A stretch of 63,760 nt of DNA, the filler included, from Lenisia limosa (taxonomy: Eukaryota; Protista; Breviatea), in NCBI GenBank assembly GCA_001655205.1. It is 16 parts of 16 records of this genome, joined end to end, with 100 filler letters (N's around TTAATTAATTAA, not from the genome) between each part and the next. Parts side by side here need not be neighbours in the genome. Positions count along the whole stretch, not along the records: positions 1 to 1,190 come from LPNZ01008598.1; 15 more parts are not named here. One strand, given 5' to 3'. A program made the translations under genes and the position numbers. Of this stretch, positions 1 through 1,061 are shown piece by piece; the first letter of the stretch is position 1; every line of letters starts with the position of its first letter. Under the pieces are notes generated by a model that saw only the letters and a program-made list of their open reading frames with translations, did no database searches and had not been told where the DNA came from.

Positions 1-60
1 AAAAATAATAGAATACGGAGTTTTGAATAAAATACGGAGTTTAGGTTGCCTAGCATATTA

Positions 61-90
61 ATTAGTATTAATATTAATTGCCCGGAGCTC
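61..90. mobile_element. Solo end of the GAGCTCCGGGCAAT MITE family
   Basis: attagtattaatattaattgcccggagctc matches the right end of the element at 20240-20315. Confidence 0.5.
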
Positions 91-367
91 AAATATATAA
101 TATGACAATACATACAGTAGCATATCGATATAATTACTATATATCATATCATATATGATATAGTTTTGCTTTTTGCTGAAAGTCTGTGTTATCGTCAATA
201 TTTATCACGAATTATTTGCCCCGTGATGCTAGTTTGATAAATGATGATGTTATATACGGTTTATATTATATTTTTTGTCGTAACTATATAGTTCGCGTAA
301 TATTTTTATTGATAATTGATATGTACTAGATGTCATAATGTCCCCAACCGCGCTAATACTATTTTAG

Positions 368-915
368 TAGTCTTTTAAAAAAGACAGAGAAATTTTCTCT
401 TGGTGTTCGACAGATACTTGAAAAGAAAGAGGTATTACCTAATTATGGTCTTAAATTTTGTTCAGGGATTGTTCCGGAAGAATATGATGGGGAAAAGGGT
501 TAACTTTGCTTGTCGGTTTGTTTGTGAGTATTTTTGTCTTATCGCCAGCTCTGTAATTTCACCTGATGCTTCACTTGAGACAAATGAGATTGGGCTGCCT
601 TTAGTGTTTGCCAAAACACTTACTTTTCCAGAGATTGTCACTCAGGTATTATTTTGATATAGTGATGCTGATAAACGTTGAGAAAGTAAGAAACCTGATA
701 CTAAATGGTTGTGATAATCACCCTGGAGCCAATTCAATTGAAATGTTGTGTTTTTTTTTTTCTAATGGTTGTAATGGAACATTTCATAATTTGAAAAGGT
801 TCAGTTATGAACAACGACTTGCAATGGCCAACACTCTTGTTTGAGATAAGCTGTATTTATCAAATTAGGCAACGTTCTCTGGTAGTCAAGGAGAGTGTCC
901 AACAGTTATAAGAAG
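368..915 (+). CDS. RPA1: RNA polymerase I largest subunit, internal fragment with tiny introns
   Basis: Exons 368-431, 466-515, 549-645, 671-747, 772-838 and 869-915 give [10 protein letters not shown]|[17 protein letters not shown]|[32 protein letters not shown]|[47 protein letters not shown]. The EKKEGLFR-x2-MMGKRVN and TNEIG motifs are Pol I type. Introns are 34, 33, 25, 24 and 30 nt. Confidence 0.88.
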
Positions 916-1061
916 GTATTATCAGCTTTTTTTTTGTATTATTATTTTTGGTGGAAGATTAACTTCCTGTGTTCAACACCCCCCTCAAAACCATCCAAAA
1001 TTATACGAAGGCTGTGCACATACATACAGTATACACCTAACATATGATGTATCGGTTCGTG

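What the first reader, a model, noticed from the sequence alone, without database searches (positions are those of the whole stretch)
646..771. Two adjacent tiny GT-TG introns in RPA1
Intron 646-670 (25 nt, gtattattttgatatagtgatgctg): the internal AG at 661-662 gives an immediate TGA. The AG at 681-682 is in frame but deletes INVE, including the conserved N of 'PE.VT..N'. TG at 669-670 gives EIVTQINVEKVR, which is colinear with the remembered Pol I motif. Intron 748-771 (24 nt, gtgtttttttttttctaatggttg) is T-rich, has CTAAT and contains no AG. Removing it gives SIEMFNGT; retaining it inserts eight residues (LCFFFSNGC in place of F).
Basis: partly seen in the sequence, partly recalled or inferred. 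Interest (0 to 1): 0.8.

Follow-up and report, generated by a model that had tools for sequence, protein, structure and literature searches.

The report
Two tiny GT-TG introns in RPA1
A fragment of the RNA polymerase I largest-subunit gene from an unidentified AT-rich eukaryote yields the universally conserved protein only if two stretches of 25 and 24 bases that start with GT but end with TG instead of AG are removed. This would be an unusual way to end an intron, but no RNA junction was seen here.

Summary
Bases 646-670 and 748-771 read as stated, and the gene is RPA1 (best solved-structure matches are Pol I A190/RPA1).

Using the only canonical acceptor at element 1 (AG 682) and keeping element 2 scores 134 bits. 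AG 682 deletes four residues where 35 of 35 orthologues have fixed spacing.

Features that fit introns:
- Element 1 starts with GTATTA, the same donor as the GT-AG intron at 432 and the GT at 916.
- Both elements are T-rich like the three GT-AG tiny introns beside them.
- Another eukaryote has a GT-AG intron at the site of element 1.
- For each TG, the first AG downstream is in frame, at +12 and +27. This is the TG-AG tandem arrangement known from human alternative acceptors.

A polyA RNA run of the same study holds a third of the exon-region words, so the locus is transcribed and its RNA is not colinear with the DNA. No junction could be read.

The bounds of element 2 are not fixed by homology. 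The organism is unknown.

Verdict: probably real GT-TG ultrashort introns (about 0.55). They are a new variant of a known rarity. RNA proof is missing.

The parts
368..431 (+). RPA1 exon (…[21 protein letters not shown]). The 5' bound is uncertain, with AG at 366-367 or 369-370. A non-coding intron of at least 266 nt lies upstream.
   Evidence: tblastn of full-length orthologues onto the window; frame-3 translation
432..465 (+). Canonical tiny intron, 34 nt, GTATTA…CAG
   Evidence: Removing it joins EKKE to [13 protein letters not shown], as in all orthologues
466..515 (+). RPA1 exon ([17 protein letters not shown])
516..548 (+). Canonical tiny intron, 33 nt, GT…AG, in frame and free of stops
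   Evidence: All solved and library orthologues lack these 11 residues between AxR and SVISPD
549..645 (+). RPA1 exon ([32 protein letters not shown])
646..670 (+). Element 1: a 25-nt putative intron, GTATTA…GCTG (GT-TG). Placements 645-669 and 647-671 to 649-673 score equally. The in-frame alternative acceptor is AG 681-682.
   Evidence: Scan of all in-frame removals; fixed spacing of 10 residues in 35/35 orthologues; same donor hexamer as 432 and 916, and 48% T; GT-AG intron at the same site in L001
671..747 (+). RPA1 exon ([25 protein letters not shown] + tt). Its first 12 nt (INVE) are lost if AG 682 is used.
748..771 (+). Element 2: a 24-nt putative intron, GTGT(T)11CTAATGGTTG (GT-TG). 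The bounds are not fixed by homology. The in-frame alternative acceptor is AG 797-798.
   Evidence: Removal gains 11.6 bits over retention and 17 bits over the GT-AG 748-798 option. Orthologues have 24 residues between PGA and A..L in 34 of 41, and none has more than 25. 67% T.
772..838 (+). RPA1 exon (t + [22 protein letters not shown])
839..868 (+). Canonical tiny intron, 30 nt, GT…TAG. It contains in-frame stops.
869..915 (+). Probable RPA1 exon ([15 protein letters not shown] + ag). It is followed by GTATTA at 916 and no further recognisable exon up to 1190.
   Evidence: Adds 2.4 bits and aligns with the variable linker before ..kkvyr; no NRQPTLH-bearing exon downstream

Best explanation
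Bases 646-670 and 748-771 are two ultrashort U2-type spliceosomal introns in the RNA polymerase I largest-subunit gene of an AT-rich eukaryote whose introns are mostly 24-34 nt long. Both have an ordinary GT donor but are cut at a TG acceptor a few bases past a branch-like motif. In each case a true AG lies in frame 12 or 27 nt further on. This is the TG-AG tandem arrangement known from rare alternative acceptors in vertebrates. In the proposed mechanism, the donor and branch region define the tiny intron, and the second catalytic step takes the TG that sits at the usual short distance from the branch. The downstream AG may help early recognition, or may be used in a minor in-frame isoform. 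Shown here: the sequence, the RPA1 identity, the need to remove 25 and 24 nt, the lack of a canonical pair that does so, and transcription with a non-colinear RNA. Inferred: that the spliceosome does the removal and that the cut is exactly at TG.
For: 1. The product is gap-free over 104 profile positions at 161.2 bits, against 133.8 bits for AG 682 plus retention of element 2.
2. The only canonical pair at element 1 (646-682) costs 15 bits and deletes INVE. There 35/35 orthologues keep 10 residues between PE.VT and .NG, and N-V-E matches the profile consensus.
3. Retaining element 2 gives 32 residues where 41 orthologues have 17-25. The GT-AG options give 15 or fewer.
4. Donor GTATTA at 646 is identical to the donors at 432 and 916. 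T content is 48% and 67%, like the GT-AG introns (40-52%) and unlike the exons (30%).
5. A different eukaryote (L001) has a 46-nt GT-AG intron in the codon right after PEPVT, the same site as element 1.
6. The first AG after each TG is in frame, at +12 and +27. Both lie within the 28-nt TG-AG limit reported for 36 human genes (PMC2374985).
7. CTAAT ends 5 nt before the TG of element 2, similar to the branch-like CTTAT and CAAAT near the AG of the canonical tiny introns.
8. PolyA RNA run X1 holds 0.33 of the sampled words of 367-915, while the DNA-like run holds 1.00. A spliced model predicts 0.36-0.43 and unspliced RNA about 1.
9. The DNA contig of run X2 (depth 43) matches the window with no differences over 31-1092.
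Against: No junction read or spliced contig was seen: read laying laid nothing from the RNA run, and no mRNA-derived protein of this organism is in the protein collections. The word share (17 of 51) fits models that use the downstream AGs slightly better (likelihood ratio about 2.6). In human, TG acceptors have never been found as the sole acceptor, and AG-to-TG mutants do not splice at TG (PMC2374985). Element 2's ends are not fixed: GT..GG (745-768) and GT..TA (750-773) score as well. Position +1 after the TG of element 2 is T, not a purine. Run X2 is probably the source of the assembly, so it is not independent proof of the two T bases.
Confidence: 0.55

Rival explanations
1. Only canonical acceptors are used. 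The mRNA is spliced 646-682 (37 nt) and 748-798 (51 nt), or keeps 748-771. This fast-evolving organism then makes an RPA1 lacking four and nine residues, or carrying eight extra. The ortholog-like coding look of 671-682 and 772-798 would be a remnant of recent AG-to-TG changes.
For: Both downstream AGs are the first AG after the TG and are in frame. The RNA word share of 0.33 is closest to the models that use them (expected 0.355-0.38). In human, AG-to-TG mutants shift to neighbouring AGs (PMC2374985).
Against: It costs 15 and 17 bits against the orthologue profile. It deletes the N-V-E of a segment with invariant spacing in 35/35 orthologues, which archaeal Rpo1N also has. It needs two independent recent A-to-T changes at position -2 of two neighbouring acceptors, while about 400 nt of exon show no damage.
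Confidence: 0.2
2. The window is a recently disabled copy or allele of RPA1 (a pseudogene or a deleterious haplotype). Its two acceptors were hit by mutation, and a functional copy lies elsewhere.
For: The piece is a short contig bounded by very high-copy repeats (depth up to 26,000 against 43). No exon with the obligatory NRQPTLH motif is found in the 275 nt after 915.
Against: All six exon pieces are open and 57-65% identical to orthologues with no gap. Two random hits both landing on the A of an acceptor AG, and both being A-to-T, has a chance of roughly 1e-5 by my estimate. The missing downstream exon is explained as well by a long repeat-bearing intron like the one upstream.
Confidence: 0.1
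3. The two elements are removed from DNA, not RNA. They would be germline-limited internal eliminated sequences of a ciliate-like organism, and the window would come from germline DNA.
For: Element 1 can be drawn as a TA-bounded 25-bp unit (TA at 647-648 and 672-673) whose excision gives an equally good product, QVNVE, at 161.4 bits. The sizes resemble the shortest Paramecium IESs (my own knowledge).
Against: Element 2 has no TA pair and no pointer longer than 1 nt at a 24-nt spacing; there is only a 3-nt TGT at a 21-nt spacing. Both elements start with intron-like donors. All four glutamine codons in the exons are CAR, with no in-frame TAA or TAG. The best named matches are fungal.
Confidence: 0.05
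4. Artefact: assembly or sequencing errors created the two T bases or the two insertions.
For: The assembly is fragmentary and may derive from amplified DNA. The only DNA run is probably its own source.
Against: The contig has depth 43 and is identical over 31-1092, with no variant at 669 or 770. Two errors of the same kind at the same functional position are very unlikely. Insertions of 24-25 nt that start with good donors are not a known artefact.
Confidence: 0.03

Closest known systems
TG-AG tandem 3' splice sites of U2-dependent introns in vertebrates (Szafranski et al. 2007, PMC2374985; GNAS, TSPYL2 and ARS2 examples in PMC4176328 and PMC1557818)
   Same: An ordinary GT donor, a TG as the cut acceptor, and an AG within 28 nt (here 12 and 27 nt). 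There is a pyrimidine at -3 in both elements and a purine at +1 in element 1.
   Different: The vertebrate introns are of normal length. Their TG is always a minor or tissue-specific alternative and never the acceptor needed for the conserved protein. Here the introns are 24-25 nt long, two lie 77 nt apart in one essential gene, and the TG form is the one colinear with all orthologues.
Ultrashort GT-AG introns of myxobolid myxozoans, dicyemids, Paramecium, Stentor, mikrocytids and nucleomorphs (PMC13644364, PMC6543705, PMC9505925, PMC10245619)
   Same: The length class of 22-34 nt, AT-rich sequence, reduced splice-site motifs, and A-rich or branch-like bases a few nucleotides before the 3' end.
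   Different: All are described as ending in AG. Annotation pipelines there allow only canonical ends, so TG ends would not have been seen. The organism of this window is not identified.
RNA polymerase I largest subunit (yeast A190 / S. pombe rpa1 / human POLR1A; PDB 4c2m_A, 7aoc_A, 7ob9_A)
   Same: The region GLFRK.MMGKRVN.A.RSVISPD…NEIG.P.VFA..LT.PE.VT..N…NG….PGA is colinear, at 57-65% identity with fungal and other orthologues.
   Different: Only about 120 residues are in the window. Cys replaces Ala/Gly in NFACRSV, as also seen in some library orthologues. The catalytic NADFDGD and NRQPTLH parts lie outside the window.

Membership tests
RNA polymerase I largest subunit (RPA1/A190) | Scores better against Pol I than against Pol II, Pol III or archaeal largest subunits | tested here: met
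   RPA1/A190 45 bits (E 7e-11), RPB1 29 bits, Rpo1N 28 bits, RPC1 23 bits. Named library hits are RPA1.
RNA polymerase I largest subunit (RPA1/A190) | NRQPTLH and NADFDGD motifs present downstream | not testable with these tools
   They would lie beyond the piece. No such exon is found in 916-1190.
U2-type spliceosomal intron | GT (or GC) at the 5' end with the local donor consensus | tested here: met
   Element 1 has GTATTA, as at 432 and 916. Element 2 has GTGTTT, compared with GTTTGT at 516.
U2-type spliceosomal intron | AG at the 3' end | tested here: not met
   Both end in TG. The only AG-ended in-frame options delete conserved residues.
U2-type spliceosomal intron | Branch-like motif a short way upstream of the 3' end | tested here: inconclusive
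   Element 2 has CTAAT ending 5 nt before the TG. Element 1 has only GTGAT or GATAT. Three reference introns are too few for a model.
U2-type spliceosomal intron | Absent from mature mRNA, shown by junction reads | tested here: inconclusive
   Read laying laid no RNA contig. The RNA run holds 0.33 of the words of 367-915, which fits any spliced model and excludes an unspliced one.
TG-AG tandem acceptor introns (PMC2374985) | A TG acceptor with an AG no more than 28 nt away | tested here: met
   The AG is at +12 (682) and +27 (798), and both are in frame (for the rule).
TG-AG tandem acceptor introns (PMC2374985) | Both the TG and the AG isoforms exist in RNA | not testable with these tools
   No junction data were obtained.
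U12-type intron | Donor RTATCCTT and branch site TCCTTAAC | tested here: not met
   The donors are GTATTATT and GTGTTTTT, and neither element has TCCTTAAC.
Ciliate TA-bounded internal eliminated sequence | TA at both ends, at a spacing that restores the frame | tested here: not met
   Element 1 has such a pair (647/672), but element 2 has none.
IRE1-cleaved HAC1/XBP1-type intron | CNG|NNGN in seven-base loops at both junctions (motif recalled from my own knowledge) | tested here: not met
   Element 1 has CAG|GUAU and CUG|AUAA, which lack G at +3. Element 2 has GUU|GUGU. In the predicted folds the junctions are not in 7-nt loops.

The most novel reading that the evidence does not exclude
In this lineage the spliceosome places the 3' cut of ultrashort introns by distance from the branch point rather than by the AG dinucleotide. 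TG would then serve as the constitutive acceptor in a sizeable share of introns (two of five here). That would overturn the rule, drawn from human data, that TG never works as the main acceptor. It would also mean that gene sets of tiny-intron organisms, predicted with GT-AG-only models, systematically miss or mis-join exons.
Probability: 0.3. Interest if true: 0.75.

Novelty: new variant of a known kind. Interest (0 to 1): 0.55.

Why it matters
AG at the 3' end is the most rigid rule of U2-type splicing. The known TG acceptors are minor alternatives that depend on a nearby AG. Two TG-ended introns of 24-25 nt that are needed to make the conserved form of an essential enzyme would show that a minimal intron can be defined without the AG. 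They would offer a natural system for studying how the second catalytic step picks its site. On the practical side, genome annotation of parasites and protists with ultrashort introns uses GT-AG-only models. If TG ends are common there, some of their reported low gene completeness and odd insertions or deletions could be an annotation artefact.

Tried and rejected
- Read laying on the polyA RNA run laid nothing. The tool warns this can be a false zero, and its single call was then spent.
- I looked for the organism's own mRNA-derived protein in four ways, and none found it. The searches were an exact ORF look-up, a word-indexed search with the ORF 608-841, a full HMMER scan of 1.8 billion representatives (best hit 85% identical over 48 residues), and a profile search seeded with the window's exons.
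- Metagenome scans for relatives of exons 4-5 and for the high-copy flank repeat were empty.
- Rfam and ARAGORN found nothing in the window.
- Exon-exon pairing across the elements, as in euglenid non-conventional introns, was weak. The hairpin around element 1 has z = -2.68, but duplex tests of the flanking exons give p of about 0.2 for element 1 and 0.03-0.08 for element 2, and one canonical intron scores alike. I rejected this as evidence.
- A +1 frameshift at TTT-TGA (652-657) would restore the frame but would add eight residues where spacing is invariant, so I rejected it.
- An intron ending at AG 661-662 (17 nt) gives an immediate TGA, so I rejected it.
- The apparent likeness of 958-1010 to NRQPTLHKPS did not score.
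- The organism could not be identified. The best named matches are early-diverging fungi at no more than 65% identity. Mikrocytids are excluded by their 16-17-nt introns.

Full report
**What is there.** The piece (1-1190, 33% G+C) carries a fragment of a eukaryotic RNA polymerase I largest-subunit gene on the + strand.

- Translating 466-645 and searching the solved structures gives Pol I RPA1/A190 of S. pombe, yeast and human as best hits (E 7e-11 to 8e-9). These are ahead of RPB1, archaeal Rpo1N and RPC1.
- In every alignment, 11 residues (516-548) are looped out. This is a 33-nt GT-AG intron that happens to be in frame.
- Reading on, the gene is cut into small exons: about 368-431, 466-515, 549-645, 671-747, 772-838 and 869-915.
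- Three of the tiny interruptions are canonical: 432-465 (34 nt), 516-548 (33 nt) and 839-868 (30 nt).
- The two under review are 646-670 (25 nt) and 748-771 (24 nt). Both start with GT and end with TG.

**Is removal needed, and can a canonical pair do it?** A HMMER scan of 1.8 billion representative proteins with 466-645 returned 609 hits. From 46 that span the region I built a profile and scored alternative products.

| Product | Score (bits) |
|---|---|
| Element 1 removed, element 2 kept | 149.6 |
| AG 682 used, element 2 removed | 145.8 |
| Element 1 removed, GT-AG 748-798 used | 143.9 |
| AG 682 used, element 2 kept | 133.8 |

- An exhaustive scan of in-frame removals around element 1 shows that all the best ones are 25 nt long. 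The only well-scoring canonical pair is 646-682, and it deletes INVE.
- In 35 of 35 orthologues, exactly 10 residues separate PE.VT from .NG. The deleted N-V-E matches the profile consensus, and archaeal Rpo1N has the same segment.
- Around element 2, any 24-nt removal starting between 739 and 752 scores 159-162 bits. So the length is supported but the ends are not.
- Of 41 orthologues, 34 have 24 residues between PGA and A..L, and none has more than 25. Retention gives 32, and the GT-AG options give 15 or fewer.

**Are they introns?** Several features say so.

- The donor of element 1, GTATTA after CAG, is identical to the donor at 432 (after GAG) and to the GT at 916 (after AAG). By my estimate, such a hexamer among the eight best placements is a sub-per-cent chance.
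- Both elements are T-rich (48% and 67%), like the three GT-AG introns (40-52%) and unlike the exons (30%).
- Element 2 is a T run followed by CTAAT that ends 5 nt before the TG. This spacing is similar to CTTAT and CAAAT before the AG of the canonical tiny introns.
- A genomic contig of an unrelated eukaryote (L001, 46% G+C) was fetched through an ORF that reads into its introns. It has a 46-nt GT-AG intron in the codon right after PEPVT, which is the site of element 1. So an intron at this position exists elsewhere.

**Fit to known TG acceptors.** GT-TG introns are a known rarity (PMC4176328, PMC1557818).

- Szafranski et al. (PMC2374985) verified TG acceptors in 36 human genes. They were always in tandem with an AG no more than 28 nt away, with a pyrimidine at -3 and a purine at +1, and were never the sole acceptor.
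- Here the first AG after each TG lies at +12 and +27, and both are in frame. Position -3 is C and T. Position +1 is A for element 1 and T for element 2.
- The arrangement therefore fits that class.
- Two things differ. The introns are ultrashort, and the TG form is the one that keeps the protein colinear with every orthologue.

**RNA and DNA evidence.** Two runs of one 2016 study hold the sequence.

- The DNA-like run X2 has a contig identical to 31-1092 at depth 43. It is probably the source of the assembly.
- From the polyA RNA run X1, read laying laid nothing.
- The index shows that X1 holds 0.33 of the 51 sampled words of 367-915, while X2 holds 1.00.
- X1's 0.16 share over the whole piece comes to about 19-20 of 122 words, so nearly all of them lie in the exon region.
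- The locus is therefore transcribed and its RNA is not colinear with the DNA.
- The figure cannot tell TG from AG use. It leans slightly to AG (likelihood ratio about 2.6), and incomplete transcript coverage would lower any expectation.

**Rivals.**

- *Only the AGs are used.* This needs two recent A-to-T changes at position -2 of neighbouring acceptors and a polymerase missing an invariant segment. I give it 0.2.
- *A disabled copy.* This is hard to square with about 400 nt of undamaged, well-conserved exons. I give it 0.1.
- *DNA elimination.* Element 1 can be drawn as a TA-bounded 25-bp unit giving an equally good product, but element 2 has no such ends. I give it 0.05.
- *Artefact.* This is unlikely at depth 43 with two like changes at the same functional position. 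I give it 0.03.
- U12-type and IRE1-type splicing fail their sequence tests.

**Organism and novelty.**

- The best named orthologues are early-diverging fungi (Smittium, Geosiphon, Coelomomyces), but at no more than 65% identity. The source lineage is not identified.
- Lineages known for 22-34-nt introns include myxobolid myxozoans and dicyemids (PMC13644364, PMC6543705). Mikrocytids have 16-17 nt.
- All of these are described as GT-AG. Their annotations were made with canonical-only predictors, so TG ends would not have been noticed.

**Verdict.** It is a new variant of a known rarity, and of moderate to high interest if RNA confirms it.

Noticed in passing
window 1-120 and 1041-1190: Both ends of the piece are very high-copy repeats. 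Summed contig depth in the DNA-like run reaches 1,500 and 26,000, against 43 for the unique middle. Each end holds a small tandem duplication: AATA(G/A)AATACGGAGTTT at 7-23/26-42 and TG(T/A)T(A/T)AAAACCGCGAA.A at 1060-1077/1078-1095. They have no Rfam, tRNA or metagenome match.
   Followed up: partly
window 108-119 and 1020-1031: An exact 12-nt direct repeat, ATACATACAGTA, lies just inside each repeat-rich flank, 912 nt apart (blastn E 0.009 between the flanks). It could be chance or part of a repeat family.
   Followed up: no
window 516-548: This canonical 33-nt GT-AG intron is a multiple of three with no stop codon, so its retention would go unnoticed by nonsense-mediated decay. It makes an 85-residue ORF (400-657) that reads through it.
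   Followed up: yes
window 619-690 and 738-786: The exon sequences on either side of both TG-ended elements can pair. Examples are 635-640 with 669-674 across the 3' junction of element 1, and GAAATGTT (740-747) with AACATTTC (778-785) around element 2. The hairpin around element 1 folds better than 196 of 200 shuffles (z = -2.68). Duplex tests of the flanks alone are weak.
   Followed up: partly
L001 1050-1900: An RPA1 locus of another eukaryote (Logan contig, 46% G+C) has GT-AG introns of about 40-130 nt. One is 5 nt away from the window's 516-548 intron (after AARS-G rather than inside the R codon). One is at the site of element 1. None is at the site of element 2.
   Followed up: partly
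window 916-1040: After the GTATTA at 916 there is no recognisable RPA1 exon. A faint likeness of 969-1010 to NRQPTLHKPS did not score. The next exon presumably lies beyond the repeat at the contig end.
   Followed up: partly
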